A stretch of 64,000 bases of DNA, taken from positions 83,452,001 through 83,516,000 of the forward strand of contig NC_042998.1 in assembly GCF_006345805.1 (NCBI RefSeq), given 5' to 3'. The first letter of the stretch is position 1; every line of letters starts with the position of its first letter. The position numbers and the translations under genes were made by a program. The notes under the pieces are model-generated. The model was not told the DNA's origin, did not search any database, and worked only from the letters and a program-made list of their open reading frames with translations. Of the stretch, positions 3,141 to 58,000 are shown piece by piece. This DNA comes from Octopus sinensis. Lineage: Eukaryota.

Positions 3141-5460
<2,320 letters not shown>

Positions 5461-14212: not shown

Positions 14213-14395
14213 AGAAATGAATACACACATACACACACACATCTTTGCGACGAGCGGGAACGTGAAGCTCTGAGTTACAGCTTATGAAGATATAAGAAGT
14301 TATATAAGAGAAAAAAACATGTAATAATCGAAGTAGGAAAAAGTTCAAATTCATACATGAATTTGTGTTTGTTTATTATATGATAATAATGAATT

Positions 14396-23577: not shown

Positions 23578-23741
23578 ATGCCGGTTAATATCAACAGAAA
23601 AGACTTTTCTTCGAGAAAGGGATTAATCGAAAAAGAAGCAAACCTTTTACTTCACCAATTATTTACGATTTATGATGAGAAATATTTTTATTGCAAACTT
23701 ACAGGAAATGTAAGAATTAGCTGGAGCAAACGAATGACCTC
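23578..23741 (+). CDS. SPRTN: SPRTN-like exon 1 (54 codons + 2 nt; ...FTIYDEKYFYCKLTGNVRISWSKRMTS)
   Basis: ATG with A at -3; ends TC|gtaagt (phase 2); WSKRMT matches SprT WSxRMT. An upstream exon via the AG at 23527-23528 cannot be excluded. Confidence 0.9.
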
Positions 23742-32700: not shown

Positions 32701-35700
32701 CGGTTCATTATATTGCTCTAACAATCACTACTTTGAAATTCATTTCCACATTTCTGAACGAAACAAGGCTTTACGATAAATCTCATTTGATAGGCGAATA
32801 GTAAGGTTTTTCTTGTTTATAGTCGATTAATTTTTTTTTTCACCTAAAATATTTTTCATTGCGTAAATCATTTCCTGTGTTTTCGTTTTTTCAAGAAAAG
32901 CATGTGATCAAAGCATTGCTTGTGTAGCAATTTTGATTACAAGCGCAATGGTATAGCCCTTGTCTGACCCCGTCTCCTCGCCCTTTATACAGGCTTATAC
33001 AATACACAAAAGATGCAATCATAAAAGCGACTCTCCACCCCAGCTACGTTATTAGGTAATGTAGATATTTTTTTCTACTCTAGGCACAAGGCACAAAATA
33101 TTGGGGGAGGGGCCAGTCCATTAGATCGGCCCAAGTTGGCAACTGGTACTTAATTTATCAACCCGAAAGGATGAAAGGTAAAGTCGACCTCGGCGGAATT
33201 TGAACTCAGAACGTAGACAGACGAAATACTGCTAAACATTTCGCTCGGCGTGCTAACGTTTCTGCCAGCTCGTTGCCTTAGATAATGTCTCCAGCAACAG
33301 ATACAAGCGAACAAGTCACAGCGAGGTCATTCGATGGGCTAGAAATAGAAACCATATATTCCGCAAATCAATTTGTCTTTAATCCCCTTTTCCGCGGGCC
33401 TTTATTAAAGACAAAAGATTGCTGTTTTATCTGTTAATTTCAAACTTTAAAAGAAAAGTTGAAAAAAAAAATTGTATTCGAAATTTCCATTCTACATTTC
33501 TACTAATTTCGTTGGTTATTTTCCCCTCAGCTGTATCTAATCAAGAATCCGTCCAGGCAACTTTTGTTGGGTTCAGTCGGTAACTGAATCTTAAATGGTT
33601 TGAACAACGCTTCTCGATGTTCCCCAACGAAGTAATCCTCTGGGTACAGGAGTTGTACCAAAGTATCAAGTCTGGAAACCGAACTGTTAAGTGTACACAG
33701 ACCTGCATCTGTTCGAACATGGCTAAATCAATGCCTATTACTCCCTTTTGGTAACAGAATATGGAAACCTCTTAAATCTCATCTCTAGAGAGATAGTTGT
33801 CTAGAATGACTCGAGTATTTGTTCCAAATCTTTTCTGAGATCAAATCCTGTAAAGATCGATTTTGCTTGTCATTCTCTAGGTATCGTTAAAAAATAGTAT
33901 CAGTCTAGGATGCTGTATTGGTGGAACTGTTTCAGAGTTGGACATGGTGCCTTGTGTCTGTTCTGGTCCTCTGAGTTCTGAATGCGACGACACCAGTTCC
34001 AGGATGTATAGACCCAAATTAGTGACCTTTCGCGTGGATAAACATCAGCGGCGTGGAGAGACAACTTGGATGCGTGAATCAAATCAAGTCCTTCCGCAGA
34101 AAGAAAATCAGGCAAATTTATGAACTTCAACGTGGCGGGCGGCAGGCGTGGGGTGGGCACACATACATCATACGAATTGGTTTTTAACGGTAGAACTGTA
34201 AGTAGATAACACTATAACTGCGCGTAAGTATTGGTTTGAAAAAATCCTTACATTGACGCGCTGCTTATAGTTAGATCTACTTCGTGTTCTACCGTTAAAA
34301 ATCATTTCGTGTCTGGAAGTTTGTAATTTCTAATGACATAAAGTCTATTTCTCTCTCTCTCTCTCTCTCTCTCGTTATTATGCAAAATTATCGTAAGTCC
34401 AAAACGTTTTTTTTCACCATTCCATGGCAAAACCGTTATACTACACTGACAATTTATGATATATTGGCAGCTGAAGATACAATAGTTTGACCAAAAGAAC
34501 CGGCTATTGCAAGCAAAAATATTGAAAAAGATTTTTTAAAACGCCGAATTTGGATATACGACAGTTTAACATAATAGCAACGATATATATATAGTTACCA
34601 TGTTTCAAGAAATATGGCATTTAAATATGGAATATTGGAAATTTTTTTTTCTCTAGAATTTAATCCAAGAATTGAAGAGGAACTAAGAACATATATTTCC
34701 AAAACGTGGAAAATTACCATAGAAGGTATTTATAGATTTTTCTAAAATTGTTGAAAACTTGGCATTTTTAAAAATATCAAATTCGTCAATGCTTTCGGGG
34801 TTTTATCAAAATTGTTCTTGCTATAAGTATTGGTCTTTATCAGTCACATTTGAGAATTGAGCCTTTTCCAAGATTCTAAATTAGTTTATTCTACAAACTG
34901 TTAAACATTCTTAGTCTAGGTTTAATGAACCTATATGTGGTCGTTTGAGTTGCTAGAAATATCGGTCAGGTTTCTCGAATCATACTTCATCGTCGTTAAA
35001 AATAAATAAAATTGTTTGGTAATCAGATTAACTGTTCCGGTTCGAATGGCTTTCAGATCTGTTCAGTCAGGGCAGATCCGGGGCTAAGTAACCGTACATA
35101 AAATCCGAGGTAGATATTGCACTGTATGTTGTCCTTCCACCTACATGGAAGATCCCTTGCGCTATGACTTCTGGAATGTCTGTACATGAGCTTGATATTT
35201 CAGATTTACAAAGTGGATACATCAATTCTTTAAGCCGAAGTTGACTTCCTTCTTCGAAAAGCGGTGGATAATATCAACATTTCCCATTTGTATTGCAAAA
35301 TATTTTAGTTATTGACGTTTGCGATAAGATGGTCAAACGACTGTTTCATTGTCCAAAACTGTTAAAGAAATTAACAAGAAACTAATGGATAAGTCCCATA
35401 CCATAAAATGAGTTAGTATTAAATTAACCAAGTTCTTCATGAAGTTCCTTGAAATTTGCTTTTAGCTTTTGTCACTGCACTGCGCCATGCTGAGGCACTG
35501 TCTTGAGTTTAGAACAAATAGACCCCGCCCCAACCAGTGCTAATTTTTAAAGCTTGATACGGGGACGTAAATAAATCAAAACTGGTTGTCAAGCGGCGGC
35601 AAGACATACATATACACATAACGGGCTTCATCCAGTTTCCGTCCACTAAATTCAATCACAAAGCTTTAGTTATCCCGGCACTATAGAAGACACTTACCCG

Positions 35701-39500: not shown

Positions 39501-40013
39501 GAACCATTTTTGATTCCCAATTGTTGGCATTTAATTCTTGCTAAAGTTGTTTAGAAATCTTCACAGGAGCTCTTGTCTATTTCATAAATCTAGTCTCGTT
39601 GATCTGAATCACCAATTACAAACTCTAATTGAATTCGGATATAAGTTTGTGTGCATTATATTAAAACTTTGAAATATAAACTCCAGCTCTAAATGTACAA
39701 ATATAAATTACTTGCAACGACGACTTTTCAAATCGATTTTTGAAACTGCTGTCAATATAATTTCGAAACTCTTGTACCACACCCTATTAGTTTTTTATTT
39801 TTTAATGTTTTTTTTTTTTCGAACAATGGTTAGATTTTAATCGTTACTTTTAAACATTCTCTTAAAGCTATGAAAAAACCCGCGTCATCTTCAGAAAGTG
39901 ATTTCTCAAGCGACAGTGATGACATGATTCTCAATTGTTATTCATGGAGTAGCTATTCCGATTCTTTTAGCGATTCAGGTGAGCAAGAACGAAATGTCTC
40001 TTTCTATCTCCAT

Positions 40014-40044
<31 letters not shown>

Positions 40045-43000
40045 ATCTTTCGAGCATTTCATTGCGGCCATGTTGGAGCCCCGCCTTAAAGGGTTTTAGT
40101 TGCAGTAATCGACCCCAGGACTTGTTTTATCGATCACTTTTGCCGAACTGCTAAGTTGCGGGGATATATATAAACACAATCATCGGTTGTCAAGCGATGG
40201 TGGGTGAGGAACATAGATGCATGTATATATATAGTATACAACAGGCTCCCAGTTTCCGTCTACCAAATCCACTCACAAGGCTTTGGTCGGCTCGAGGCTA
40301 AAGTAGACATTTGCCCAAAGTGCCATGCAGTGGGACTGAACCCGGAACCATGTGGTGTTGGGAAGCAAACTTCTGAACTTTCTCTTTCTCTCTAGTACGT
40401 GTGTTTGTGCTTTCAAAAAAAAAATAGTGACCAGAGATGCGTTTCTGCAAAATCTCCATTTGTATTGATTTACCATTATGTCCGACTTAACCATTCTTTC
40501 TCAGAACTACTTCCTTTTAACTTGCAATAATTCGAATCCTTTTTTCAATATGCAAACCTTCTGTCCTAATCTATGGAAGGTAGTTTTACTAAGGTCAAAC
40601 GTTGACAATTAAGTCTGTAGCAAGATTTCAGTTTTTATTGCTATAAGTTATGCACTTCAATTGAGCACAAAATGGAGCAAGTTTCTATGACCCTACAATA
40701 CCCAACCGTAGCTAATAGCTAAGTTCTTTTGTTAAATACAAAAGGATATTCAACGCTTCATTCACGCTTGTGAATTTTATTGGTCAATTCTTGTCTTTAT
40801 TCTAAGCCAGAGTATTTTGTTGAAAACAATTTCAATATTTATGTATTTAGGAAAAAAATCAACTTATTGTAATCACATTCGTTCAGGCTTACATCATTAA
40901 AGAATTTCCACTTGACTTCAAATTTGCCAGATATTTATGCTTTCTCAAATGAAGGAAAAATTAGTCTACAGACATGATCATTTTACAAATTCCCTTTGTG
41001 AACACGTAATTTTTTAGCTCAATCGCAATGCGCGCCACATTGTGCAAGTTCCTTCTACTCTGAACAAATTCAATAAGCGAGTTCGCTATTTTTTCTCTTT
41101 TCATGACTCCATTTCTGAAATCTTCAATTTTTAAAAGGTCATCTGGAGCTAGATTTCGACATATAAACCGGCCCACATTAAGTTTAAGACCTCTATATCT
41201 GTTGCAGAGAATAAGACCGCATTATTTAATCGGCAAAGAAATATGTTCAGTTTCAACATTTCATGAATATTTAAATGTCATTTTTTTTATTTCAGATTTT
41301 TCTACCGATGAAGAGTCAGGTGAGCTTAGCTACCCAAAACTTAATCCAGATGACATAGTATATATTCAAATCTAATAAACCCTATATTCTGTTTTGATTT
41401 TCAGTTTAACCTAAATCTTAATGGTTGTTGAATGATTAAAGATAGTTTTGTCGACACGTGTTGGAAGAGAGACGGACGATTAGCAGACATTAGAGATTGA
41501 TTTGCGATAGTCACTTCGGCTGTCGACGCTCTTGGGTTAAATCTCACTGAAGCCAACTTTGCTTGTCATACTTTCAGGGTGATAATATACTAGTCATCTC
41601 GACATTCTCTAACTCTTTGTTTTCTAATTTCTGGTAGAAATCGGCTGTCGTCAGACCTGAGGAGAGATGAGCTCCTCCATGTCTTAAAATGTATCACACG
41701 TTATATCATGACGGGATCTTACGATTCTATCAAAGAATTGAGGATTCAAGCCAAAGCAAGGCAATATTGACATATTTATCTTGCAGTTCGAAAATCTTCA
41801 ATTCTAGGTTTTCTTTACAAATCTATTTTAACAAATAGACCATTTCGAACGTATTTATTGATTTCAGCCTAGTCTAAATCTATTCACATTACATAGCTGT
41901 AAGATAATGTAACAACTGGATTCACCATCAACTTTGAGTCATCGGTTTATCAAATCAATGTAACGTTTTCTTTTGGGATTGTAAAAATATTTCAAAAACA
42001 GGGTTGATAGTTTAATCTAAAGACTGTTAGGATTTGATCACTAGTTTAAGTAGACGATTGACAAATTTCAATATTTAGTTGAACATCACCAACTTGTTAG
42101 AATAAACTTATCGCAGGAATTATGAAATAACTTATTAGTTCAGATTAGGTAGATGACTTGCATTTTATTTCATTTGCATTAAAGAATTTGTAATCAATGT
42201 TTTGTTTGACTTTCTAAACTAGATAATTTTGCATCTAATGAAAAAACCGAAATGAAAGCACCAAAGACCAGTTACTATAACTGATATTTTTTTTAACATT
42301 TTGCATTTCTTGACTGATTTGAAATCGTTGACAGTTTGACGCAACATTTTAAACAATTGAATAATTTTTGAGTCGGAATAATCAGCTATCTAATAAGGCG
42401 AAAATAGACAATGAAAACCAAAAGTTGTTTTGAAACAGGAAAAATAACATTTTTTCACAAACGCTTAATGATCAATACAAACTAATTGCTATTCCATGCA
42501 TAGCAACTCTATAATTGAAGAGTATTTTTAAAGTCAGTAAATTTAATTGAATTTCCGACGAATTCAAATTAAAATGGATGAATTGAACTGTGGATATAGT
42601 AAATTTATGGTTTAATTTCGATTTTTCATAGTAAATTTACTTACGTCGTTGGTGGCTATCGACAGACGTCAAAGCTAACATATCCCTGCAGCCTTCACCT
42701 CAAGACTTTTAATTTGAAAAATTAACTTCTATCTCTTAATAGATTTCTTAACTTTTATTTAAGCAACTAAAATGGTTACTTTCAGCTAAATCAGTTAAAC
42801 CACGGATGGAAAATAAATGTGAGTTTAGTTCAATTATTTTAAAATAAAACTAATATTTGGGGATAAAATGAGCTGTTCATTAAAAAAAAAAAATCTGGTT
42901 TTTCATTTTTCATAATTAACACTTTTCCTAGCTAGAACCGCTTTAACTGGAGCTGTATCAGTTACACTTCTAACAAATGATAAACATTACTAAAAATTAA

Positions 43001-46000
43001 ATTCGAATTAAAACAATTAAGTTCACGTAGGGATGAAATTCCTTTCACTAAAATCTCTATCATTCGAGCACAAACTCTTTCAACATTGAACAAGTAAAGT
43101 AGAGACTTATCATTTAAGACTAATATTTTAGGATGAGTACAGCTAAAATGTCCATTTTAGTTGTTGCTTGATCTCTTTGTTCAGAATTTAATTTAAAATT
43201 CTTTTTAGCTGCAAAATCCACAGCTCAAGTTACACCAGTAAAGGAAAATCGATGTAAGTATAGATATTAAGGTTATTTTGGTTTTCGTAATTTTTTCTAG
43301 CTAAAACCGTTTAAACTCTAGCTACAGCACTCACACTACCACCAAGATAAGATAAACGCGAGTAAAAATTCTAGTTAAAACTATAATTGTCAAGTAGATG
43401 AAATTACTTTCAACAAAATCCCTATCACTCATTCCCCCACAATTGAACAAGTAAACTTCTCATTTAAAACTAATATTAATGGAGGAGTACAGCTAAAATG
43501 TCCATTTTAGTTGTTGCTTGATCTTTGTTCAGAATTTAATTTCAAATTCTTTTTAGCTCTAAAAACCACAGCCCAAGTTAAAGTCGTAACCCCACCAAAG
43601 GAAAATCGATGTAAGTATAGATCTTAAGGTTAAGATCTATACTTAACCTTGCTTTCTGATCTTTGTAAAGTTTTCAAGTTAAAACCGTTTTAACTCTAGC
43701 TACAGCACTTACACCACCAACAACAGAAGATAAACGAGAGTAAAAAATAAATTCCAATTAAAACTATAATTGTCCTATTGATGAAATTCCTTTCAATAAA
43801 CTCCATCACTCAAGCTCAAACTCTTTCACCATTGAACAAGAAAAGTAAACTGATTTAAACCTAATATTCATGGATGAGTACAGATAAAACGTCGAATTTA
43901 GTTGTTACTTGGTCTCTTTGTTCAGAATTTAATTTTTAATCCTTTTTAGCTACAAAATCCTCAACTCCACTTAAACCAGTAACACTACCAAATGAAAATC
44001 GATGTAAGTTTAGATCTTATTCGTGGATAAGATGTTCAATTTAGCTTGTCGCTTGCCTTCTGATCTTCGTAATTTTTTTTCCAGCTAAAACTGCTTCAAC
44101 ACAAGATGTATTATTAACACCACCTCCGACAGAAAATAAACGTGAGTAAAAAAAAATGTAATTCCTATTAAGACTGAGACATGTAGGGATGAAATCTAGA
44201 TTTATAGATCATATGCTTTGCTTTCTGTTAACTTCACATGACTGCTTGACATGCTTGTATTGCAGCCAGACCACCCTCAAATCACAAACTTTCACCTTAG
44301 AAAAAAGATGCAATGGATACTTTGGGCCTTTGTTACCTGTACACAGGAAAAGAATGACTGGTCATAGCTGCAACCCACTTCATCCTACATCTGCTCGATC
44401 AAGGATGACAAATGAAAATGCCAAGTTCCTTCTTGGTATAAAGTTAAACATACTTGTATTCCGCTCTGCGGATCTGGCTGGGCTCATGTCACCTCCAGGT
44501 TTTGCTAGCCTATCTCTCCCCATCTCATTATCCTACTTGTGTCCAATTGCCATCAAACCCCTGCACATTAGCCTCGAGTCCTATGATTCATAGTCGCTCA
44601 CTTGCTTTGCGTGGCGTATTGATGACCTAGACCACAACATTCCCCCTGAATGGGACTCCAGTCCATATCATAGTTACTGGTTTACAGCGGAGTGAAGCTG
44701 GAAAAAGTAATTTGCTCAAGAGCACAACACCCGATCTGGGAATCGAAACCATCTTGTAAATGAGTGCAATATCCTAACCACTAGTGCTTTCGTGTCTTTT
44801 CTCACAGGCCCTCTACACCCAAACTTCCCTTTCTGGAATGTAAACCTCATAGAAGTCCCTTACTGTTCATATATCCCGCTGGCGTTGATTTATAAAGGTT
44901 CAAGAACCGGTCTCGGAGTCTGAGATACATGGACTCTGGCACTGCCTTCAGACTCAGCATTAGGACCATTGAACTTTTAGATTTAGCTTCTTTCCTGCTC
45001 GTGCATTATCCACTTAAGTTATACTTATAGATATATATGAAACGACTCGATACCTATTTTTTCTCTTTAAGTCTTTAATGCTGATATAGATTTCAAATTA
45101 CTATTTACATGTCTGCAGAGAATATCTAATTTCTTTAGTTGCTAAATTTACGGTCACTATTTCACCATTGGAGAAAAAAAAAGTGAGTAAAAATTTTAAT
45201 AAAACACGGACGAAATGTCAATTTAAAAGTTTGCATATTGTTCGTCTTTTTATTCCTAATTTAATTTTACTCTTCTAGATACTAAAATGAGAGTTCTGTT
45301 TAAATCATCAACAGAAAGTAAACGTGAGTAAAAATTAAATTCTAATTAAAACAATAGTCATGTAGAGATGAAATATAGATTTATAGATCATATGGTTTGC
45401 TTGTTACTTTGAAAACATGATTGCTTGGCATGCTTGAATAAAACTAAATTGCCCTCAGATTACGAACTACATGACAGAAAAGACATAGTATTCTGTGGAT
45501 CTTAGTTACTCTCACTCAGGAAAAGACTTACTATGGGTGAAATGCTTTTCACAATAGGCTTGCTCCATCGGGGCGACACAATACTAAAATCTTATTTTCT
45601 CTGGCATGAAGTTGCATATACGCTCCAGCATACTATCCCGCCGCTCTGCCCTTTCTGTCTCTACTACAACGGTCTCTACTCCACGGGTCTGGCTGGGCTC
45701 GTGTCATCTCCACTGAAGCTGTGCCATCCTATTTATCGCTTCTCTTCTCATCGCTCTATTTGGGTCCAACTAATTACTGGCACTCTGGTTAGTTACAACA
45801 AGGGTTCCAGTTGATCAAATCAACGGAACAATCTACTCGTGAAATTAACATGCAAGTGAGTGAGCACTCCACAAATATGTGTACATTTAGCATAGTTATC
45901 AGTAAGATTCAGCGTAATACAGAATGTGACAATGCTGACCCTTTGAATTATAGTTCATTGTCCCCAGCTGAGATAGTATCTCGCTCAATAGCGCAACGAA

Positions 46001-49000
46001 TCTCCTGGAATCGAACTTGCTGTCGTGAGCCGAATACCTTAACCACTGTCATGTGCCTTTATTACTAGGCCCTCAGCAAATTCCTTCCAAGATTCTCAGC
46101 AAATTCCTTCCAAGACTCTCAGCCCTCTGAACTCACCCTCTAATAACATCGGTTTCATTGATTTAGGAGCGCTTGTGAAGATACAAGAGTATAGCCGGTC
46201 TTCATCGAGACCAAACATGTAGAGAGAGAAAAAATGCCGATTAGTGCCGTAGAACTTTAGATTTAGCTTGCCTTCTATTCGTGACGTATTCACTTCGATT
46301 GTTTGTACTTCAAGAAAGATATGAAGCGATGTCCAATCTTGTCTCAAATTCTTCAATAGTATAACAGATTGAAAAATATTTGCAAGACTTAGGATATTTC
46401 ATTTCTTTTTTAGTTTCTAAAATCAGTTTCACCGCTGAACAATAGTAATGACTTTTCATTTAAAACAAATGTATGTTGAGAACAGATAAAATGTCGATTT
46501 TAGTTGTTGCTTGGTCTCGTTGCTCAGAATTTAACTTTTTAGCTACAAAAACCACAATTCAAGTTGAATCAGTAACACCACTAACAAAAAATCCACTTAA
46601 GACCTTGAGGCTGTTCGTGAATAAGATGTTCAATTTAGCTTGTCATTTGCTTTCTGATTTTCTTAATTTTTTTCTAGTTAAAACCGCTTCAACACGAGAT
46701 GCATTAGTTATACCACCACCAACGGAAAATAAACGTTAGTAGAAATTAAATTTTGATTAAAACTGAGACGTGTCTAGGTCATATGATTTGCTTTCTATTC
46801 ACATGACTACTTGACATGCTAATATTGCAACCAAACCGCCTTCAAATCATGAACCTTTCAAAAAAGATATTAGGCACTGTGAGTTTTCGTTACCGATACA
46901 CAGGAAACGAATGCCATCGGTGGATACCGCTTCGTCTTAGATCTCCTCGATCAGGGCGGGAAAACATCTAATTCCTTATTGCGGTAAAATTAGACACATT
47001 CTAGCCTGATGTCTCACAGGTATGGTGTCTCCTCACTGGCTCTGGCTGGAATTGTGCCACCTCTACTAACGCTTTGTCTCTCTTTTTCTCCCCATCCGTC
47101 CCATTCTTAATTACACCCAATCCTTCCTTCCCAGAACGTCTTCCTTCTGGAATTCATTCTCTGCTTGTATTTCTCGCTAGTATTGACTCAGTTTCAAGAG
47201 GAATGTTAATGATATCGATCTCATAGGTTTTAGGAGAGCTTACAAAGGTAATGGACCCTGCCCTCTCTTTGAGCCTCAGAAAACAATTAGCACCATAGAA
47301 TTATAAATTTATTTTGTTTTCTGTTTGACTCATTTAAAATTCTCCAATTTTCTCTTTAAAATTCTTCCACTTTCTCTTTAAAATTCTTCCACTTTCTCTT
47401 TAAAATTCTTCCACTTTCTCTTTAAAATTCTTCCACTTTCTCTTTAAAATTCTTCCACTTTCTCTTTAAAATTCTTCCACTTTCTCTTTAAAATTCTTCC
47501 ACTTTCTCTTTAAAATTCTTCCACTTTCTCTTTAAAGTTCTTCCACTTTCTCTTTAAAGTTCTTCCACTTTCTCTTTAAAGTTCTTCCACTTTCTCTTTA
47601 AAGTTCTTCCACTTTCTCTTTAAAGTTCTTCCACTTTCTCTTTAAAGTTCTTCCACTTTCTCTTTAAAGTTCTTCCACTTTCTCTTTAAAGTTCTTCCAC
47701 TTCTCTTTAAAGTTCTTCCACTTTCTCTTTAAAGTTCTTCCACTTTCTCTTAAAGTTCTTCCACTTTCTCTTTAAAGTTCTTCCACTTTCTCTTTAAAGT
47801 TCTTCCACTTTCTCTTTAAAGTTCTTCCACTTTCTCTTTAAAGTTCTTCCACTTTCTCTTTAAAGTTCTTCCACTTTCTCTTTAAAGTTCTTCCACTTTC
47901 TCTTTAAAGTTCTTCCACTTTCTCTTTAAAGTTCTTTCTCTTTAAAGTTCTTTCTCTTTAAAGTTCTTTCTCTTTAAAGTTCTTTCTCTTTAAAGTTCTT
48001 TCTCTTTAAAGTTCTTTCTCTTTAAAGTTCTTTCTCTTAAAGTTCTTTCTCTTTAAAGTTCTTTCTCTTTAAAGTTCTTTCTCTTTAAAGTTCTTTCTCT
48101 TTAAAGTTCTTTCTCTTTAAAGTTCTTTCTCTTTAAAGTTCTTTCTCTTTAAAGTTCTTTCTCTTTAAAGTTCTTTCTCTTTAAAGTTCTTTCTCTTTAA
48201 AGTTCTTTCTCTTTAAAGTTCTTTCTCTTTAAAGTTCTTTCTCTTTAAAGTTCTTTCTTTCTTTCTCTTTAAAGTTCTTTCTCTTTAAAGTTCTTTCTCT
48301 TAAAGTTCTTTCTCTTTAAAGTTCTTTCTCTTTAAAGTTCTTCTCTTTAAAGTTCTTTCTCTTTAAAGTTCTTTCTCTTTAAAGTTCTTTCTCTTTAAAG
48401 TTCTTTCTCTTTAAAGTTCTTTCTCTTTAAAGTTCTTTCTCTTAAAGTTCTTTCTCTTTAAAGTTCTTTCTCTTTAAAGTTCTTTCTCTTTAAAGTTCTT
48501 CTCTTTAAAGTTCTTTCTCTTAAAGTTCTTTCTCTTTAAAGTTCTTTCTCTTTAAAGTTCTTCTCTTTAAAGTTCTTTCTCTTTAAAGTTCTTTCTCTTT
48601 AAGTTCTTTCTCTTTAAAGTTCTTTCTCTTTAAAGTTCTTTCTCTTTAAAGTTCTTTCTCTTTAAAGTTCTTTCTCTTTAAAGTTCTTTCTCTTTAAAGT
48701 TCTTTCTCTTTAAAGTTCTTTCTCTTTAAGTTCTTTCTCTTTAAAGTTCTTTCTCTTTAAAGTTCTTTCTCTTTAAAGTTCTTTCTCTTAAAGTTCTTTC
48801 TCTTTAAAGTTCTTCTCTTTAAAGTTCTTTCTCTTTAAAGTTCTTTCTCTCTTTAAAGTTCTTTCTCTTTAAAGTTCTTTCTCTTTAAAGTTCTTTCTCT
48901 TTAAAGTTCTTTCTCTTTAAAGTTCTTTCTCTTTAAAGTTCTTTCTCTTTAAAGTTCTTTCTCTTTAAAGTTCTTTCTCTTAAAGTTCTTTCTCTTTAAA

Positions 49001-52000
49001 GTTCTTCTCTTTAAAGTTCTTTCTCTTAAAGTTCTTTCTCTTTAAAGTTCTTTCTCTTTAAAGTTCTTTCTCTTTAAAGTTCTTTCTCTTTAAAGTTCTT
49101 TCTCTTTAAAGTTCTTTCTCTTTAAAGTTCTTTCTCTTTAAAGTTCTTTCTCTTTAAAGTTTTTCTCTTTAAAGTTCTTTCTCTTTAAAGTTCTTTCTCT
49201 TTAAAGTTCTTTCTCTTTAAAGTTCTTTCTCTTTAAAGTTCTTTCTCTTTAAAGTTCTTTCTCTTTAAAGTTCTTTCTCTTTAAAGTTCTTTCTCTTTAA
49301 AGTTCTTTCTCTTTAAAGTTCTTTCTCTTTAAAGTTCTTTCTCTTTAAAGTTCTTTCTCTTTAAAGTTCTTTCTCTTTAAAGTTCTTTCTCTTTAAAGTT
49401 CTTTCTCTTTAAAGTTCTTTCTCTTTAAAGTTCTTTCTCTTAAAGTTCTTTCTCTTTAAAGTTCTTTCTCTTTAAAGTTCTTTCTCTTTAAAGTTCTTTC
49501 TCTTTAAGTTCTTTCTCTTTAAAGTTCTTCTCTTTAAAGTTCTTTCTCTTTAAAGTTCTTTCTCTTTAAAGTTCTTTCTCTTTAAAGTTCGTTCTTTCTC
49601 TTTAAAGTTCTTTCTCTTTAAAGTTCTTTCTCTTTAAAGTTTTCTCTTTAAAGTTCTTTCTCTTAAAGTTCTTTCTCTTTAAAGTTCTTTCTCTTTAAAG
49701 TTCTTTCTCTTTAAAGTTCTTTCTCTTTAAAGTTCTTTCTCTTTAAAGTTCTTTCTCTTTAAAGTTCTTTCTCTTTAAAGTTCTTTCTCTTTAAAGTTCT
49801 TTCTCTTTAAAGTTCTTTCTCTTTAAAGTTCTTTCTCTTTAAAGTTCTTTCTCTTTAAAGTTCTTTCTCTTTAAAGTTCTTTCTCTTTAAAGTTCTTTCT
49901 CTTTAAAGTTCTTTCTCTTTAAAGTTCTTCTCTTTAAAGTTCTTTCTCTTTAAAGTTCTTTCTCTTTAAAGTTCTTTCTCTTTAAAGTTCTTTCTCTTTA
50001 AAGTTCTTTCTCTTTAAAGTTCTTTCTCTTTAAAGTTCTTTCTCTTTAAAGTTCTTTCTCTTTAAAGTTCTTTCTCTTTAAAGTTCTTTCTCTTAAAGTT
50101 CTTTCTCTTTAAAGTTCTTTCTCTTTAAAGTTCTTTCTCTTTAAAGTTCTTTCTCTTTAAAGTTCTTTCTCTTTAAAGTTCTTTCTCTTTAAAGTTCTTT
50201 CTCTTTAAAGTTCTTTCTCTTTAAAGTTCTTTCTCTTTAAAGTTCTTTCTCTTTAAAGTTCTTTCTCTTTAAAGTTCTTTCTCTTTAAAATTCTTTCTCT
50301 TTAAAATTCTTCCACTTTCTCTCTTCAAAAGTTATGTATTTTCTTTTTCAGTTACTGGAGTCCGTACCGTTGAAGCTGAAACTTCTTTACCATTGGACAA
50401 GAAAAGTAAATATTTGATTTAAACGAGCAGATACGAAATATCGATTTAGTTCTCTTTATTCATAATCTATTTTCAAAAATATTTTTTATTTTCTTTTAGC
50501 CACTAAATCCACAACTCGGGATAAACCAGCTACATTACTAACGAAAAATACATGTAAGACCATTTTCTTGAAGCTAATTATCAAGGATAAGATTCAATCT
50601 GCTTTGTCGTCTTTGTTTTGTAAGTTTTTTCCAGCTAAATTCATAACTCGTGCTAAATTGCTTACACTCAGCGAAATGCAGGCAAAGATAGTTTTATTTG
50701 AAATTCTAATGCAAAATTTGTCTTGATGAACTGGAAATCTCGATACTGTGGTTTGTTTCCATTCCTCATGCCTTTACTATTAAGGTTACGTCCACTTGAT
50801 CGTCGACTTGTTAGAAATGTAGCCAAATTTCCCTCAAGTTGTACCCTGCCGTCTTAGAAAAGGGCGCGTTGAAAAGACAGACTGGTAATATTTTGGTCAT
50901 AGATCTATTGTCCGAGCTAACCTTGAGCTAAAAGAACATGTAAAGAGTAATTTCCAATGAGATCACTTTTATACGGAAGCTGAATGCATTAGATTCAATC
51001 TTTCTGTTCATAACTTGTGCCAAACATTTTAAGGAAAATTTGAAATGTTATTGTAACCTTTTCTCCAAAAGATTTTGAATGCTGATGAGATTTTGAAGGG
51101 TTTTTTTTACATGTACGGCACATAGGATTGTGCGAAAATGGAATTTTTGTTACTAATGTAGTCTCAAGTTTTTACTGTAACCTCGAACCGGCCAAATCAC
51201 TTGTGTGAAATTTGGTAGACGGAAACTGTATGGAAGCCTATTTATGTATAGAAATGTATGTTTACATTCAGACTTCTAGCATGAAGCGTTGAGAAAAAAA
51301 AAACGGTGGCGTTTGTTGATAGTCCTTAACGAATCACTTCGTAACTTTGTGCGTTGGAAAAGGGGTGGAATGGAGTAACAATATCTCTAACCCGAGCAAT
51401 GGTTAGCGACAAGAAAAATATCGATATAAAACAATGTTTTGATACGTATTCGTCCGGTCCATGCTATGCTAGCATAGAAAAACGAACGTGAAATGAAGAC
51501 TTCGGGCGATATTTAATTTCTATTTAGCGGCTGAAACTCCTGTTACTGCAGCTCAAATTCCTTTGCCATCAACGAACAAGGAAAGTAAATAAGGTTGATT
51601 TAAATAAAGCTAATATTCGTGAGTTTCATGAGAAAAAAGGGAGATGACGTATCGATTTAAGTAGTTTAATTTCTTTTTATTCACAATTCAATTTTAAATA
51701 CTTTTTTAGCGTCGAAAGCTACCGCGACCCGAACGAAATCAGTATCACCACCACCAACTAAAAGTAAAAGTAAAAATCAATTTTTAATTCAATAAAACTA
51801 AGAGCATTGTAAAGAGTTATAGGTCGTGCGGTTCGCTTTCTATTTCCTCTTCACATTACCATCAGTGAACAAAAAAGTGAAAATCAATTTTCAACGAAAT
51901 CAATTGGAAGATGAACGTAGTTGAAATTAACTCTTTTCATAGCTTTCTTTTCATAACTTAGTCACTTATAGTTTATACGTATAAAGATATATAAAAACGT

Positions 52001-55000
52001 CATGATATACTAGTTAATCTTGCTTTCTAAAGATCTTGGCTGCTGAAACACAGCTGAGAGTGGATCTCATGGAGCAGTTAGTTCCCAGATCGTATCGTAC
52101 TAACACTTTATCCGGACTAGAAATATTCTCAAATTCCACTAAACAGATGATCACTTGGGGAGGAAGTTTGCCATATATCAGCTGGTGCAGCAGTGCAGAA
52201 ACCAGGGCTTGCAGGCAGGTTGCGACGCAATAGTAGTGGGCTGTCGAGGGTTTTGTGGGGCATTCATTCTGCAAAGCCTTTGATGCAACAAAGAGGGCTA
52301 TAAATTTCATTATTGAAGCTGCAAAGATAGCCTCTTGGGGACATTGAATAAAGGGCAGACCAGTGATTTGCTGCAACAGGAATGCAAACTGGGACTTCAT
52401 CAAACTTGATCAACCCGGGGTGAGTCAACTAGGCGAAGTAAATATTATGTTGAAAGACCCTACCTCCACTTCCCTTTGAAACACAAGAAACATCACTGAT
52501 GATGCATTCCAAAGCATCTGCGAGACATCTTAAAACTAACATACAAAAATATTCGAAAATATTTGCGTCGTTTAAATGAATGTCTTCAATCAAATAACAT
52601 TCTTTTTATTTATTTAGCAAAGAAATTGCCTGAAACTTCTAAAAATTCAGCGGCGAAGGAAAAAGGTAAATGAAGTACCAACAACTATAAATAATGAATA
52701 CTGTTTGAGTAAATTAGTTTACAACCTTTCGCTTCTTCAGAATTTACTTACTTGAGTTCCATTAAACAAAAGAACGTGAGGACTTCACAAGTCTGTCGTT
52801 CTATTAATAAAGGATTTATCCGTAAGAGTGTTAAAAGCGACAAATAAACTGAAAATCGTTACTGTGAAGTTCAATAACGGTGAACATGTTTTTGAATTCA
52901 GTGAAATTATTTCTCTAAATTTATTCAACCTGTATAGTACAGATATTCTGAAGTTACATGAGGTTTGTATCAAGAACTAATGGACGATAACTGGTATTTT
53001 AAGACTAGAGCAACTACTTTTAAAAATAGCAAGAGAAAATGCCAGATTTTAGAGATAGGGTATTGCAGTATGTAGTCGTTGACAACTGCGAATTTCTCCA
53101 GTCTTTTTCACGAGCTAGCGAGAAATACAAGCAGAGGCAATTTTTCCAATCTTTTTCACATGCCAGATCAAAAATGCTTTCCCCCTACTCTCAAAAATGC
53201 TGTTGAGTAAATACCTCCTTTAAAAAAAAAAAGGCTACTTAATTCTAAACCTAGTTTCCAATTCTAGTCGTCTCCACTTTTGACAAAGTTTAAACGTATT
53301 TCAATGATTTTATAGATGGCCCATTTTACAAATTAAGATATGCAGTTATTCCTGAACTGCTTCTACGAAGATAAACGTCACGATAGCTTAATCTTGTTTC
53401 CCAAAAAATCTTAAATACATTTAAAGTATAACGGAATAACATTTTTAAACAATTTGTTTTAAGCTAAGAAAACTGAAGCTCCAGCTAAGGTTTCATCAGT
53501 GAAGAAAAAACGTGAGTAATTTTACAAAATCAAATGTTATGACCTTTCGATTTTAATGAGTATGCAGCTAGTTTTCAATTCCAATCAACAAAAACACAAA
53601 ACCTCACAACAGACTTTTTTCCCTTAATTCCTTTCTTTAATGAATTTAATAAAGGTTAAAAGCAACAATCAAAGTTTACTTTCCTAACATTCTGGTCAAA
53701 TATTGATTTCAAATTCTGGCACAAAGCCAGCAATTTCGGGGCAAGTCGATTACGTTGACCCAATATTTACCTGGTACTCAGAGATCCCAAAAGAATGAAA
53801 GGCAAAGTCGATCCCGGCGGAATTTGAACTCAGAACTCGACGAAATGCTAAGTATTTTCATTGGTGTGTTAACGATTCTGCTCGCTGCCTAATTGTCAAA
53901 TTATTGAAAATAATAAATAGTACAGATGTTGCAGTGGCACTAATTAAAACGAAATTTCTATTTGAAGAATTTTTTTCATTAACGTGAAATGTTTGAAGAT
54001 ACGTTGTCGAGATTGTATGCGCTGTAAAATATTCTTGAATGTCTTCTGATGTCTTAGCGTTGTACATTGTGAAAATCACTCAAAGAAGTAAAATGGCAAA
54101 TTCTTGAATTTTACTTATAAAAACATTTTCTATCTCCAAAGTTTGAAATACAACAGAAATCCAGCATTTTGGGGTCTGAACTTGAAAATGAGATCCAAGC
54201 CGTTTCAAGTCTTTCTAAATGAAGTTCTCTCATTGTTATGCAGGATTACAATTAAAGAAATGTTATTGTAACAGTAACTAAAATGAATATTTTTCCAGCA
54301 AAAATATTTTTCACACTTTTTACACACTTCAGCAATTATTTTTGTTCATTTTCATTGTATGTCAAACCTACATTAAATCTTTGTTCTGAGAGTATGTGCT
54401 AAGGTGCCAAAGAAAAGTTCTGACTGCGCCTGAGGTGTGATGGCTAACACGGTTCCGAATACACATACAGACGCAACATCTGACGAAGTGTTTCCCACCG
54501 CATCTACGGTTGTAGTGGTTAGCTATGCGATTACGATGTCACACCGGCTGTGACAGCCTAATTGAAATTGCGATACTTCTATTCTCCAGTCATACATCAC
54601 TCATGATCTTGTATACAGGCTTTATATATATACAGTCATTTGGCTGCAGCCATGCTGGGGCACCGCTTTGAATTTTAGTCGAACAAATCGACCCGGGACT
54701 TTTGAAAGCTTCGTATTTTATCGATCTTTTTGCCGAACCGCTAAGTTACGAGGGCTTAGACGCACCAATACCGGTTGTCAAGCGATGATGGACACACGGA
54801 CATACACAGATACGACGGGCTTTCAATTTCCGTCCACCAAATCCACTCACAAGGCTTTGGTCGACTAGAGGCTATAGTAGACATTTGCCCAAGATACCAC
54901 GCAGTGGGACTGAAAATGAAACCATATGGTTGAGAAGGAAGCTTATCACACAGCCATATGTAAATATACTGCATGAAGAGTAGAACTGATGCTCCCCACT

Positions 55001-58000
55001 CAGTCCCCACCTCCTCTTTTTTTTTGAAAATGCAATAGTTTGCGTGCTCCATAATTCTATGCCTTGATGTTGGACAACTTCAAACTTTTAAACCATCGAA
55101 TTAAGCATAGCAATTTCCTTTTTTTTTTTTTCCAACTCTCACAGCCCTATTTAGGAGTGCTTATCCCACTGTTATGAGAAATACTGTGAGTAAAAAAACC
55201 TCATTGAGCAGTATTTCCTTTGATTTTTTGCTAGGCGTGTTCTAATTTTCTCTTTACAAAGTATGTACGCTTCTTTGTGAGCAACCATCTTCAATTAAGA
55301 ATGTTCGATTGCATCTTAAGCTTCGTGTGTGCATATTTCCTTTGTTCTCTAATTAAGGTAGTGCATTGCTGTTGACTTTAACTCACATAGTCTTAAGCTT
55401 AGTTTCGAATTCCTATGTTGAGTCCCGCCCCCTCTCTTCAGTTCGCGAATCAATAACAGATACTTATCAAGTTCTCTCCTAACCTCAAATGATTCCCTTC
55501 GATTCAATTAAAACTAAATACCCCGTTTCAACTGTATTGATCATAGCGTATTGATTATATTGGTTTTATCTTCTAAAGACTATAGATAACTATAATATTA
55601 GAAATTTTAACTTTTAGCCGCTGATTCTTCTTCAAAGACTGCAAAAACTAAGAAAAAGGGTAAGTAAAGATCAATTTCTAACAAAATCAAATTTAACGTG
55701 TCTGAAACTTTTTTTTCATGGCGTTATTTGAGTCTTATTGGTCAGTTTGTTACTAAGCCCTCAGCAAATTCATTCGCAGACTCTCAGCCCCTTCTGTTTA
55801 TATTTCTCACTGGTTTTGATTTTATAAAGTCTCGAGCCAGCTGTCACTCATGAACAAGTATGGCTTAGAAAGAGGTTTCACGCTTTTACTAATTCTTTGA
55901 ACTGTCTACGCTATTGCGAGCAGACAAGGGCACCCATACGGTTCTTCTGTATTGACACTTAAATATCAATAACTAGAGCTTTTTTACCAAAATCTCTTCC
56001 TGCAAATGACTGTCCGATTTATTGAAATGTTGAGATAATACTTGTTCTTCCTGAATAAATCCTTATAGCTAAAGATCATGAAGTGCAATTCAAATCCTGT
56101 CTCCTAAAGATTATAACTGCTGACATAGTTACATTTGTCTCCAAACAAGAAATTTTTACGCTACTAAAAATACTGAAACTCCATCTAAAACAAACAAAAA
56201 GAAATGGGAGTCGAGATCAATTTGCAGCCAATTTTCCCCGTTAATTTAAAGCAACAAGATCGCAAGGTGGGTCATGTTCTATATTGTCTTGTCACGTTGC
56301 TTCTCACTTTATCAATATTGCAGAACGATTACTGTTCTGAAGCTACCAATAGAAGGGGTGAAGAAGACCGACCATCTGAGGCGACACTTTTATGCAGGGT
56401 AACACTCGTATATCTACAGTGTAAACCTGTACAGGGTTCGGGGCCTAGCTGTGGCGGCAATCTCAAGGTCTACCCATGCAGTACTTTTACTACGCTACTA
56501 GTTGCAAAGGACATAGTGATAAGTTTCCCAAAAAGAGAAACTGCTTTTCCATTCAATCGAAATTTTATTTCTAGATGCTATTTAGGTGATTATTTCTAGA
56601 TACTCAATGCTAGATATTTTTGATTTTTACCTAGAAATAATTTCCTTTCCAGAATTACCAACAAATGAGAAAACGAAAATGGCTCCTAAATTCCCTGAGA
56701 GTAATATTACTTTTTTATATTTAATTTATATTTCGTAGAGTAAGCATAGCAAACTCAATATAATCAATTAGAAGCTGGTCTTTTGTTCAATAACAAGTTT
56801 TTCTACAACATAAGGTGGGCAGACAAATCGGCAATTGTTTGTGATGGTTTTAGATGCTCTGCACTAATCATTACGATTCGTTGTGTTGAAATCCCTCAGA
56901 AGTCAACTTTGCCTATCGTTCCTTCAAGGTTGATAAAATACCCGTCAAGTACTGAGATCGATATAGAGTAGATAACCCACTTGTCCCACAAATTTCAGAT
57001 CTCGTGCCAAAGAAATCATGGCAGAACTCAGTATCTGTAAAAATTTATTGCAATATGTTTTACGCTCAAACTCTCACCGAAGTAGTTTATCATTTTGAAG
57101 CCGATAGTACTAATCTAAAACAGGCTGCGAACAGGTCTGACACTGCCATTTTGGACCACTCGTTTAGCGTCGCTGATTTGACGCTGCCTTGCTTGCTATG
57201 TATTGTCACCGGGACATCATGGCACCGTAAAAACTTACTACTCTAGTTAACAACTAACTTATAATCACTTCTAAACTTTTAGCTTCCTGCTCCACATGTG
57301 AGATTGCTGGTGAAATAGTGATGAAATGTGGAAAACAATTTTCTTACAATGGGTTTCTGCAGGTTTTTGACAAAGTAGAACCGAGTTAATTTAAATTTTA
57401 ACGCTGTGAGCAGAAAAATTAAAGAGAAACAAGATTTATTAGATAACACCTATTACCACAAACACTTCTCCATCTTGCCTCTTTGTATTTCTGTACGTGC
57501 GTGTGTGTATTTGCTTCTGTCACTAAAAGAAGCCATTACCAAAATGGATTCGGTGTCCACTCCGCCGTACAAAATAGCCAGCGTCTAAACAGCCGCACTA
57601 CATCGTTTCATTCGGGAGGTTTGCTTTAAGGGGAAATCTAACGTAAATTCGAACAAAACTTTAATCTTTGCTTCTAATTTGTAATTTTTTCACATGCTAC
57701 GCCGCGGCACATCAGCAAATAGATTCCAGTCTTTTTGCAAATAAGCCATAGACCAGCGATTAACTTTGTTTGGAGATTATCCGGGTACTTGGTATTAATA
57801 CGTTACAATTGACAAAATATCGATATCTATCATTTTCAGGGATTCCGAGGTGAGTTGTCTCGGCTGGTCAGTGACATTCAGGTGTTCTTTAACACTCGGC
57901 GTCAGTTGAGGAGCTTTCCTTGAACGCTATACCGCAGCAAATTTGACTAAAATATATACACTATGTAAGTGCGACCAATAATGTTCACATTACTTGAACG

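What the first reader, a model, noticed from the sequence alone, without database searches (positions are those of the whole stretch)
39868..56700. Array of about 17 symmetric phase-1 short exons: a modular, length-tunable linker
Seen: exons of 111, 24, 33, 45, 54, 54, 57, 45, 57, 54, 54, 57, 54, 48, 48, 42 and 48 nt. All are multiples of 3, all phase 1-1, and none of the sequential junction codons is a stop (about 295 aa). Inference: almost any subset can be skipped in frame, giving combinatorial control of protease-to-ZBD2 distance and charge. This resembles schistosome micro-exon genes or tropoelastin-type arrays, but on a genome-maintenance enzyme. Exception: T-ending exons joined directly to the AA-starting exons (56653, 58035) make TAA.
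Basis: partly seen in the sequence, partly recalled or inferred. Interest (0 to 1): 0.85.

Follow-up and report, generated by a model that had tools for sequence, protein, structure and literature searches.

The report
Short-exon array in octopus Spartan gene
This region encodes the disordered middle of an octopus DNA-repair protease (Spartan family), built from about nineteen tiny same-phase exons, some made by tandem duplication; only four are optionally spliced in annotated transcripts, so the "tunable linker" idea holds in kind but is much narrower than claimed.

Summary
All 17 segments exist exactly where stated. Each has AG/GT borders, a length divisible by 3 and phase 1-1, and none has a sequential junction stop.

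The window is the Octopus sinensis Spartan-like gene. Splicing window exons reproduces RefSeq isoforms X1-X3 residue for residue. Twelve annotated isoforms (3 O. sinensis, 9 O. vulgaris) use 13 of the 17 segments:
- Constitutive: exons 1, 2, 4, 7, 8, 10, 11, 14, 15, 16.
- Cassette: exons 6, 9, 17.
- In no isoform: exons 3, 5, 12, 13.

Exons 3-13 derive from tandem duplication of a roughly 370-bp three-exon unit, and at least five decayed pseudo-exons remain. Array content differs in O. bimaculoides and Argonauta hians.

The array encodes a predicted disordered tether with an acidic head and a basic body. It spans 216-269 aa across isoforms and lies between a canonical SprT+ZBD1 core and a second C-terminal ZBD. 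Among the 184 family proteins examined, only Octopus has two ZBDs.

So in-frame modularity and cassette splicing are real. The range is about 53 aa from four exons, not "almost any subset", and any functional tuning is untested. I rate it a new variant of known kinds, of moderate interest.

The parts
23578..23741 (+). First coding exon (MPVNINRK...SWSKRMTS), start of the SprT-like domain
   Evidence: Needed to rebuild O. sinensis isoforms X1-X3 exactly.
26311..26419 (+). Exon CAGCTLQPDV...LEDLLETLL
27337..27378 (+). Exon with the catalytic HEMIH motif
   Evidence: Pfam SprT-like, E = 1.4e-23.
29303..29377 (+). Exon EHQEHGPKFHAEKKRIEKRSGMKLE
30706..30916 (+). ZBD1 exon. It starts in phase 0 and ends in phase 1, and holds the canonical zinc-binding subdomain next to the protease.
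   Evidence: Pfam SPRTN_ZBD. Aligns to human SPRTN 6MDW through residue 194.
34657..34725 (+). Exon E0, 69 nt, phase 1-1, constitutive (EFNPRIEEELRTYISKTWKITIE).
   Evidence: Predicted helix 204-218, pLDDT 70-80.
39868..39978 (+). Exon 1, 111 nt, constitutive. Acidic, Ser-rich head with one SIM-like DDMIL.
41296..41319 (+). Exon 2, 24 nt, constitutive (DFSTDEES)
42223..42270 (+). Exon 2b, 48 nt, phase 1-1 cassette (DNFASNEKTEMKAPKT). The donor is GTTACT here and GTTAGT in O. vulgaris and O. bimaculoides.
   Evidence: Present in 4 of 9 O. vulgaris isoforms and in O. bimaculoides models.
42786..42818 (+). Exon 3, 33 nt. Intact AG/GT and open frame, but in no O. sinensis/O. vulgaris isoform.
   Evidence: Its orthologue AKSVTPLMENK is used in O. 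bimaculoides.
42932..42985 (+). Pseudo-exon psiB1 (B family). Donor lost (ATTACT).
43209..43253 (+). Exon 4, 45 nt, A family, constitutive
43301..43357 (+). Pseudo-exon psiB2. Two in-frame stops; donor GC.
43557..43610 (+). Exon 5, 54 nt, A family. Intact, but in no O. sinensis/O. vulgaris isoform.
   Evidence: Its closest O. bimaculoides counterpart is used there.
43679..43735 (+). Pseudo-exon psiB3. Open frame, but donor GA.
43950..44003 (+). Exon 6, 54 nt, A family, cassette
   Evidence: In 6 of 9 O. vulgaris isoforms and 0 of 3 O. sinensis isoforms.
44085..44141 (+). Exon 7, 57 nt, B family, constitutive. It follows an 81-nt intron.
   Evidence: The O. bimaculoides orthologue has a 2-bp deletion.
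45279..45323 (+). Exon 8, 45 nt, constitutive, with a B-family 3' end
   Evidence: No orthologue found in O. bimaculoides.
46543..46596 (+). Pseudo-exon psiA (A family). Open frame, donor lost (TTAAGA).
46678..46734 (+). Exon 9, 57 nt, B family, cassette, weak donor GTTAGT
   Evidence: In 3 of 9 O. vulgaris isoforms and 2 of 3 O. sinensis isoforms.
47333..50311 (.). 3-kb intronic satellite (22-nt unit x28, then 16-nt unit x151) between exons 9 and 10
50352..50405 (+). Exon 10, 54 nt, C family, constitutive
   Evidence: (D7).
50500..50553 (+). Exon 11, 54 nt, A family, constitutive
50635..50681 (+). Pseudo-exon psiB4, no donor
51528..51584 (+). Exon 12, 57 nt. Intact signals, but in no annotated isoform of any species.
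51710..51763 (+). Exon 13, 54 nt, weak donor GTAAAA, in no annotated isoform
   Evidence: The donor is AT in O. bimaculoides.
52618..52665 (+). Exon 14, 48 nt, Lys-rich, constitutive
   Evidence: The O. bimaculoides orthologue carries a stop and has lost its donor.
53464..53511 (+). Exon 15, 48 nt, Lys-rich, constitutive
55618..55659 (+). Exon 16, 42 nt, Lys-rich, constitutive
56653..56700 (+). Exon 17, 48 nt, cassette, donor GTAATA. Paralogue of exon 2b (shared NEKTxM..PK).
   Evidence: Absent from O. vulgaris CAI9718181, O. sinensis X2 and O. bimaculoides P0042.
58035..58195 (+). Terminal coding exon. It is entered in phase 1 and encodes ZBD2 and the TAA stop.
   Evidence: Second and best-scoring Pfam SPRTN_ZBD match, 472-519.

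Best explanation
The region is the central part of the Octopus sinensis Spartan-family (SprT-like) metalloprotease gene.

Shown:
- After the SprT protease and its canonical zinc-binding subdomain (ZBD1), the reading frame passes through a run of at least 15 used short exons, all phase 1-1.
- It ends in a terminal exon that encodes a second complete ZBD.
- The central exons arose by tandem duplication of a ~350-390-bp unit holding three exon slots (families C, A and B). This was followed by birth-and-death turnover: at least five copies are now pseudo-exons, and copy content differs between O. sinensis/O. vulgaris, O. bimaculoides and Argonauta.
- Because every exon is symmetric in phase 1, duplication, loss or skipping of an exon keeps the frame.
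- Annotated transcripts use this for four cassette exons (2b, 6, 9, 17), giving linkers of 216-269 aa.

Predicted:
- The encoded segment is intrinsically disordered. It has a short helix (exon E0), an acidic Ser/Asp head with one SIM-like motif, and then a Thr/Ser/Pro/Lys-rich basic body ending in a Lys-rich tail.

Inferred:
- The segment acts as a flexible, DNA-attracted tether that lets a second single-strand-DNA-binding ZBD anchor the protease at DNA lesions. It would stand in for the SHP, PIP and UBZ recruitment modules, which this protein lacks.
- Exon number sets the reach of the tether, mostly over evolutionary time and to a small extent by splicing.
For: - Gene model: window exons spliced in silico equal XP_036370670 (X1), XP_036370675 (X2) and XP_029658544 (X3) exactly.
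- Isoforms: 12 isoforms across two species differ only by whole exons 2b, 6, 9 and 17, apart from one alternative 3' end.
- Transcript basis: the O. vulgaris isoforms come from PASA updates on Iso-Seq and RNA-seq data. That annotation averages 31,799 transcripts for 23,423 genes; this gene has 9 (PMC10700109).
- Domains: Pfam gives SprT-like 25-128 and two SPRTN_ZBD stretches. Residues 25-194 align to human SPRTN 6MDW/6MDX at E = 4.5e-44. Both ZBDs keep the Cx3C...Hx3C pattern.
- Duplication: repeat families with in-register flanking intron sequence, and pseudo-exons with lost donors or in-frame stops.
- Turnover: in O. bimaculoides the exon 7 orthologue has a 2-bp deletion and the exon 14 orthologue has a stop and no donor. 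The segments holding exons 8-11 are absent, and there are five A-type units.
- Argonauta hians: the tail exons are also phase 1, but the repeats sit inside one 327-nt exon, and no ZBD2 lies within 10 kb downstream.
- Disorder: AlphaFold2 gives pLDDT below 50 and no secondary structure for about residues 230-454, with confident SprT/ZBD1 and a folded ZBD2.
- Composition: head pI 4.05, body pI 10.15.
- Motifs: no PIP, SHP or UBZ pattern. By the same patterns, 66 of 148 family representatives have SHP and 96 of 148 have UBZ.
Against: - No reads were inspected. PASA isoforms can combine partial alignments, so not every exon combination need exist in a single molecule.
- Four intact-looking exons (3, 5, 12, 13) are unused in these annotations for no visible reason, so the rules of inclusion are not understood.
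- DNA binding by the tether and by ZBD2, and any effect of linker length on activity, are inferred from human SPRTN biology (PMC9240642), not tested.
- Exon-level conservation between O. sinensis and O. bimaculoides (83-95%) barely exceeds that of introns (about 80-84%), so constraint on the linker sequence is weak.
Confidence: 0.7

Rival explanations
1. The array is only a fast-evolving disordered spacer, and the isoform variety is splicing noise. Young or weak-signal exons are included or skipped at random, and linker length is neither regulated nor functionally important.
For: - Three of the four cassette exons have weak donors: 2b GTTACT/GTTAGT, 9 GTTAGT, 17 GTAATA.
- Sequence constraint is weak and whole exons die or differ between species.
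- The length range is only about 20% of the linker, and net charge changes by at most 4.
Against: - Exon 6 has consensus signals (TTTTTAG / GTAAGT) yet is optional, while exons 10 and 14 have weak GTAAAT donors yet are constitutive.
- Skipping of exon 17 is annotated independently in three species.
- The strict phase 1-1 symmetry is kept in every used exon.
Confidence: 0.25
2. One reading: all 17 exons are used, and almost any subset is combined to give wide combinatorial control of length and charge.
For: Arithmetically, 200 of 210 exon-exon junctions are stop-free. Nine of the 16 combinations of the four cassette exons are annotated.
Against: - Ten exons are present in all 12 isoforms, and exons 3, 5, 12 and 13 are in none.
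- No protein in the 5.8-billion-sequence collection contains the exon 12 or exon 13 peptides.
Confidence: 0.04
3. The gene model is a fusion artefact: an upstream SprT+ZBD1 gene, and a separate downstream gene that starts at the ATG in exon 1 (MKKPASS...) and ends in ZBD2.
For: Exon 1 begins with an in-frame Met. An older O. bimaculoides model (P0042, 183 aa) starts exactly there.
Against: - Three independent annotations join the two parts through exon E0, with matching phase.
- The O. bimaculoides break coincides with assembly gaps.
- The Argonauta orthologue also continues from ZBD1 through an E0-like exon into a basic tail.
Confidence: 0.04

Closest known systems
Human SPRTN / Spartan (DVC1), structures 6MDW and 6MDX
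   Same: - SprT-like metalloprotease with an HExxH motif, followed directly by a zinc-binding subdomain (E = 4.5e-44 over residues 25-194; Pfam PF10263 + PF22934).
- A long disordered, Lys/Ser-rich C-terminal half.
   Different: - No SHP, PIP or UBZ pattern.
- A second complete ZBD at the C-terminus. This was found in no other protein among the 184 examined, which include the best 150 representatives of the family.
- The tail is built from duplicated single-repeat exons.
- Identity to any non-octopod relative is at most about 49%.
Argonauta hians Spartan (GAB1604946.1)
   Same: - Closest non-Octopus relative: 58% identity over SprT+ZBD1.
- Has an E0-like exon.
- Short phase-1 tail exons and a Lys/Thr/Pro-rich repeat tail.
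   Different: - The repeats (PLKAKTVKDI) lie inside one 327-nt exon instead of one exon per repeat.
- No second ZBD in the model or within 10 kb downstream.
Tandem exon-duplication arrays that encode repetitive or disordered segments (titin PEVK, tropoelastin, fibrillar collagen 54-bp exons); named from general knowledge
   Same: - One short exon per peptide repeat.
- Exons and their flanking introns are paralogous.
- Uniform phase, so copies can be gained, lost or skipped in frame.
- Some copies are cassette exons.
   Different: - Here the array sits in a nuclear DNA-repair protease, between two copies of a DNA-binding domain.
- The array is small and includes many dead copies.
- None of these families was compared by sequence here.
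Schistosome micro-exon genes (MEGs)
   Same: Runs of very short symmetric exons separated by much longer introns, with protein variants made by exon skipping (abstract of bioRxiv 10.1101/2023.06.21.545858).
   Different: - MEGs encode small secreted proteins made almost wholly of micro-exons of 3-81 bp.
- Here only the linker is built this way, the exons are 24-111 nt, and the protein has large conventional domains.
- No homology is implied.
GCNA / ACRC (SprT-family germ-cell protease); named from general knowledge
   Same: A SprT-family protease combined with a long acidic disordered region that carries SUMO-interaction motifs. The octopus linker has an acidic head with one SIM-like DDMIL.
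   Different: - In GCNA the disordered region is N-terminal to the protease.
- The octopus protein matches the SPRTN-type ZBD (PF22934).
- GCNA itself was not compared here.

Membership tests
SPRTN / Spartan family | SprT-like metalloprotease domain with an HExxH active-site motif | tested here: met
   HEMIH at 27337-27351. Pfam PF10263 E = 1.4e-23, 83 bits against a cut-off of 25.6. Aligns to 6MDW.
SPRTN / Spartan family | SPRTN-type zinc-binding subdomain directly after the protease | tested here: met
   PF22934 at 132 bits against a cut-off of 27, in two stretches. Cx3C...Hx3C is kept in both copies.
SPRTN / Spartan family | C-terminal recruitment modules (SHP/VCP motif, PIP box, UBZ), as listed for human SPRTN in PMC9240642 | tested here: not met
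   Pattern searches find none, even in the maximal 19-exon protein. By the same patterns, 66 of 148 family representatives have SHP and 96 of 148 have UBZ. These are regular-expression tests only.
SPRTN / Spartan family | DNA-dependent proteolysis of DNA-protein crosslinks | not testable with these tools
   Needs biochemistry.
SPRTN / Spartan family | Orthology: the single SPRTN gene of the species | tested here: inconclusive
   No cephalopod protein is among the best 120 hits to a canonical mollusc SPRTN, although fishes and amphibians are. Only 120 of 1272 hits were listed, and the genomes themselves were not searched.
Tandem exon-duplication array | Exons paralogous to one another together with their flanking intron sequence | tested here: met
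   Families are A (exons 4, 5, 6, 11 and psiA), B (exons 7, 9, the 3' end of 8, and psiB1-4) and C (exon 10 and relics), with a unit spacing of 350-406 bp. Exons 1, 2, 2b and 14-17 show no DNA-level paralogy, apart from peptide similarity between 2b and 17.
Tandem exon-duplication array | Uniform symmetric phase, so copies are interchangeable in frame | tested here: met
   All 19 exons are phase 1-1.
Cassette-exon (combinatorial) alternative splicing | Transcripts that differ by independent inclusion of individual exons | tested here: met
   Met for exons 2b, 6, 9 and 17 only: 9 of 16 combinations appear in annotated isoforms. This rests on annotation, not on reads.
Schistosome-type micro-exon gene | Small secreted protein whose coding sequence is made almost wholly of symmetric micro-exons | tested here: not met
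   About 250 of 470-520 residues come from conventional exons that encode folded domains. The N-terminus is the SprT domain, not a signal peptide; signal peptide prediction was not run.

The most novel reading that the evidence does not exclude
Octopus may have rebuilt its Spartan protease into a two-anchor enzyme: a catalytic SprT+ZBD1 head and a second single-strand-DNA-binding ZBD, joined by an exon-modular basic tether. The length of that tether, set by exon gain and loss between species and by four cassette exons within a species, would act as a molecular ruler for how far from a DNA junction or gap the protease can cut. The second ZBD would replace ubiquitin/PCNA/VCP-based recruitment.
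Probability: 0.12. Interest if true: 0.7.

Novelty: new variant of a known kind. Interest (0 to 1): 0.45.

Why it matters
SPRTN proteases are switched on by two-point DNA contact through the ZBD and a basic region (PMC9240642).

- **Natural experiment.** A version with two ZBDs, no UBZ/PIP/SHP and a tether of variable length shows how recruitment and reach could be re-engineered. It offers ready-made isoforms for testing whether linker length matters.
- **Gene-structure evolution.** The locus is a compact, datable example of how phase-1 symmetric exons let a disordered segment grow and shrink by tandem duplication. Live exons, optional exons and dead exons sit side by side, and three related species can be compared.
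- **Limits.** The gene is already annotated, and the principle of symmetric duplicated exons with cassette splicing is well known. It is an instructive case, not a new category.

Tried and rejected
1. The O. bimaculoides RefSeq model lacks ZBD1, which at first suggested that the array separates the protease from its only ZBD. I rejected this because the missing part falls exactly in a 583-N assembly gap (L001 14883-15465).
2. An AG/GT, open-frame, pyrimidine-tract scan cannot pick out the exons: it gives 64 candidates on the + strand and 39 on the - strand.
3. A homologue search with the SprT+ZBD1 part alone scored only 48 candidates and returned no cephalopods beyond O. bimaculoides, so it was uninformative.
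4. A search with a canonical mollusc SPRTN, meant to find a second, canonical octopus gene, listed no cephalopod in the best 120 hits. This is suggestive but not conclusive.
5. The Rfam and tRNA scans of the whole window found nothing.
6. Literature searches for SPRTN plus cephalopod, and for SPRTN/ZBD/paralog/GCNA, returned no papers.
7. I looked for a remnant of the 5' part of the ZBD1 exon upstream of ZBD2. Only the ZBD-coding part aligns, and weakly, so the duplication is old.
8. Splice-signal strength does not explain why exons 3 and 5 (GTGAGT and GTAAGT donors) are unused.

Full report
**What the window is.**
- The window is AT-rich, repeat-laden animal DNA.
- A + strand gene runs from 23578 to beyond 58195. 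It has an HEMIH exon at 27337 and SPRTN-like exons on either side of it.
- A protein search with the conceptual tail found annotated proteins: "sprT-like domain-containing protein Spartan" isoforms of Octopus sinensis, nine unnamed isoforms of O. vulgaris, and a partial O. bimaculoides SPRTN.
- Joining window exons in silico reproduces O. sinensis isoforms X1 (487 aa), X2 (471 aa) and X3 (468 aa) exactly.
- The window is about 97% identical to the O. vulgaris locus. It is therefore the O. sinensis gene, and every exon border used below is fixed by those models.

**Check of the observation.**
Each has AG before and GT after, each is open in phase 1-1, and the total is 885 nt = 295 aa.
- The preceding ZBD1 exon (30706-30916) ends in phase 1 and the terminal exon (58035-58195) is entered in phase 1, so the chain is consistent.
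- The TAA exception is correct: it accounts for 10 of 210 possible junctions.
- The pattern alone is not above chance. The same mechanical criteria give 64 candidates on the + strand of this region and 39 on the - strand.

**Which segments are exons.** In the 12 O. sinensis/O. vulgaris isoforms:
- Exons 1, 2, 4, 7, 8, 10, 11, 14, 15 and 16 are always present.
- Exons 6, 9 and 17 vary.
- Exons 3, 5, 12 and 13 never appear.
- Two more phase 1-1 exons belong to the series. E0 (34657-34725, 69 nt) is constitutive. Exon 2b (42223-42270, 48 nt) is in 4 of 9 O. vulgaris isoforms.
- No protein in the searched collection carries the exon 12 or exon 13 peptides.
- Orthologues of exons 3 and 5 are used in O. 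bimaculoides models.

**Isoforms.**
- The four cassette exons occur in 9 of the 16 possible combinations across the two species, plus one alternative 3' end.
- The O. vulgaris isoforms were added by PASA from Iso-Seq and RNA-seq evidence. That annotation averages about 1.36 transcripts per gene (31,799 for 23,423), against nine here (PMC10700109).
- Skipping of exon 17 is annotated in all three Octopus species.
- I could not inspect reads, and PASA can assemble combinations from partial alignments.

**Origin of the array.**
- Repeat analysis shows ~350-406-bp units in tandem.
- Exon-plus-flank comparisons define three families:
  - A: exons 4, 5, 6 and 11, more distantly 3 and 13.
  - B: exons 7, 9 and the 3' end of 8.
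  - C: exon 10 and relics.
- Dead copies lie between the live ones: psiB1 42932-42985 (donor lost), psiB2 43301-43357 (two stops, GC donor), psiB3 43679-43735 (GA donor), psiA 46543-46596 (donor lost) and psiB4 50635-50681 (no donor).
- Exons 1, 2 and 14-16 are unique at DNA level. Exons 2b and 17 share the peptide NEKTxM..PK.

**Comparison between species.**
- In O. bimaculoides (locus L001) there are five A-type exons. The exon 7 orthologue has a 2-bp deletion. The exon 14 orthologue has a stop codon and an AT in place of its donor. The window segments 44200-46165 and 46500-51278, which hold exons 8-11 and the satellite, have no counterpart.
- The apparent lack of ZBD1 in that species is an assembly gap.
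- The nearest non-Octopus relative is the Argonauta hians Spartan protein. Its tail also uses short phase-1 exons, but its 10-residue repeats lie inside one 327-nt exon. No second ZBD lies in the model or within 10 kb downstream.
- Phase-1 tail exons therefore predate Octopus. The one-repeat-per-exon array and ZBD2 are, on present data, features of Octopus.

**The protein.**
- Pfam finds SprT-like (25-128) and two SPRTN_ZBD matches, the better one at the C-terminus.
- Residues 25-194 align to the human SPRTN crystal constructs 6MDW/6MDX.
- No PIP, SHP or UBZ pattern is present, although most relatives have a UBZ-like pattern.
- AlphaFold2 models SprT/ZBD1 confidently. It gives a helix for exon E0, no structure and pLDDT below 50 for about residues 230-454, and a folded ZBD2.
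- The linker has an acidic head (pI 4.05) and a basic body (pI 10.15). It spans 216-269 aa across isoforms, with net charge +10 to +14.

**Interpretation.**
- Shown: a real gene, a real run of symmetric phase-1 exons, tandem-duplication origin with exon death, whole-exon isoform differences, a dual-ZBD architecture, and a predicted disordered linker.
- Inferred from what is known of human SPRTN, where the ZBD binds unpaired DNA, a basic region binds duplex DNA and both are needed for activation (PMC9240642): the basic tether and ZBD2 give a second DNA anchor in place of the missing UBZ/PIP/SHP modules, and exon number sets its reach.
- The main rival is that linker length is not under selection and the isoforms are noise. 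Weak donors on three of the four cassette exons and weak sequence constraint favour that view. The optional status of the strong-signal exon 6 and the three-species recurrence of exon 17 skipping argue against it.

**Whether this is the octopus SPRTN orthologue or an extra copy.** This remains open. No cephalopod protein appears among the best 120 hits to a canonical mollusc SPRTN, where fishes and amphibians do appear.

**Verdict.** The case is a new variant of known kinds: a Spartan-family protease with a duplicated ZBD and an exon-array tether.

Noticed in passing
window 58035-58195 compared with 30706-30916: The protein carries two complete SPRTN-type zinc-binding domains, each with the Cx3C...Hx3C pattern. 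No other protein among the 184 family members examined has two, and the Argonauta orthologue has one. The two coding segments are only weakly alike at DNA level, so the duplication is old.
   Followed up: partly
window 34657-34725: A constitutive 69-nt phase 1-1 exon, not in the finding, encodes EFNPRIEEELRTYISKTWKITIE. It is predicted as a helix (pLDDT 70-80) just after ZBD1, and an equivalent exon exists in Argonauta.
   Followed up: partly
window 42223-42270 and 56653-56700: Exons 2b and 17 share the peptide NEKTxM..PK and bracket the repeat array. Both are alternatively included. The 2b donor is GTTACT here but GTTAGT in O. vulgaris and O. bimaculoides, where 2b is used.
   Followed up: partly
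window 58035-58195 and about 59465: One O. vulgaris isoform (CAI9718177) leaves the ZBD2 exon at an internal donor and continues in a downstream exon. This truncates ZBD2 and adds an unrelated 31-residue end.
   Followed up: no
window 47333-50311: A 3-kb satellite fills the intron between exons 9 and 10: a 22-nt unit x28, then a 16-nt unit x151, T/C-rich on the + strand. It is also present in O. vulgaris and absent from the O. bimaculoides locus.
   Followed up: partly
window 37825-38225: A 15-nt minisatellite, read as (NVSLL)n in one frame, lies in the intron before exon 1.
   Followed up: no
window 3280-4908: Long + strand open frames with a reverse-transcriptase motif (FYMDDLKLY): a non-LTR retrotransposon fragment.
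   Followed up: no
window 21104-22290: Gag-like open frames with a CCHC zinc knuckle (CFKCGQNGHIRAHC) lie about 1.3 kb upstream of the Spartan-like start codon.
   Followed up: no
window 14393-14866 and 16540-17013: Two segments carrying identical open frames lie 2147 bp apart, which indicates a local tandem duplication.
   Followed up: no
window 40056-40360, 54645-54930 and about ten other sites: A ~300-nt interspersed SINE-like repeat occurs on both strands, including inside introns of the array. It matched no Rfam family and no tRNA.
   Followed up: partly
L001 14883-15465 (O. bimaculoides): A 583-N assembly gap removes the ZBD1-coding part of the exon, so RefSeq XP_052821850 is a partial model without ZBD1. 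This is an annotation artefact worth flagging.
   Followed up: yes
one search hit list: No cephalopod protein is among the best 120 hits to a canonical mollusc SPRTN, while many fishes and amphibians are. The octopod gene is unusually divergent, with at most about 49% identity to non-octopod relatives.
   Followed up: partly
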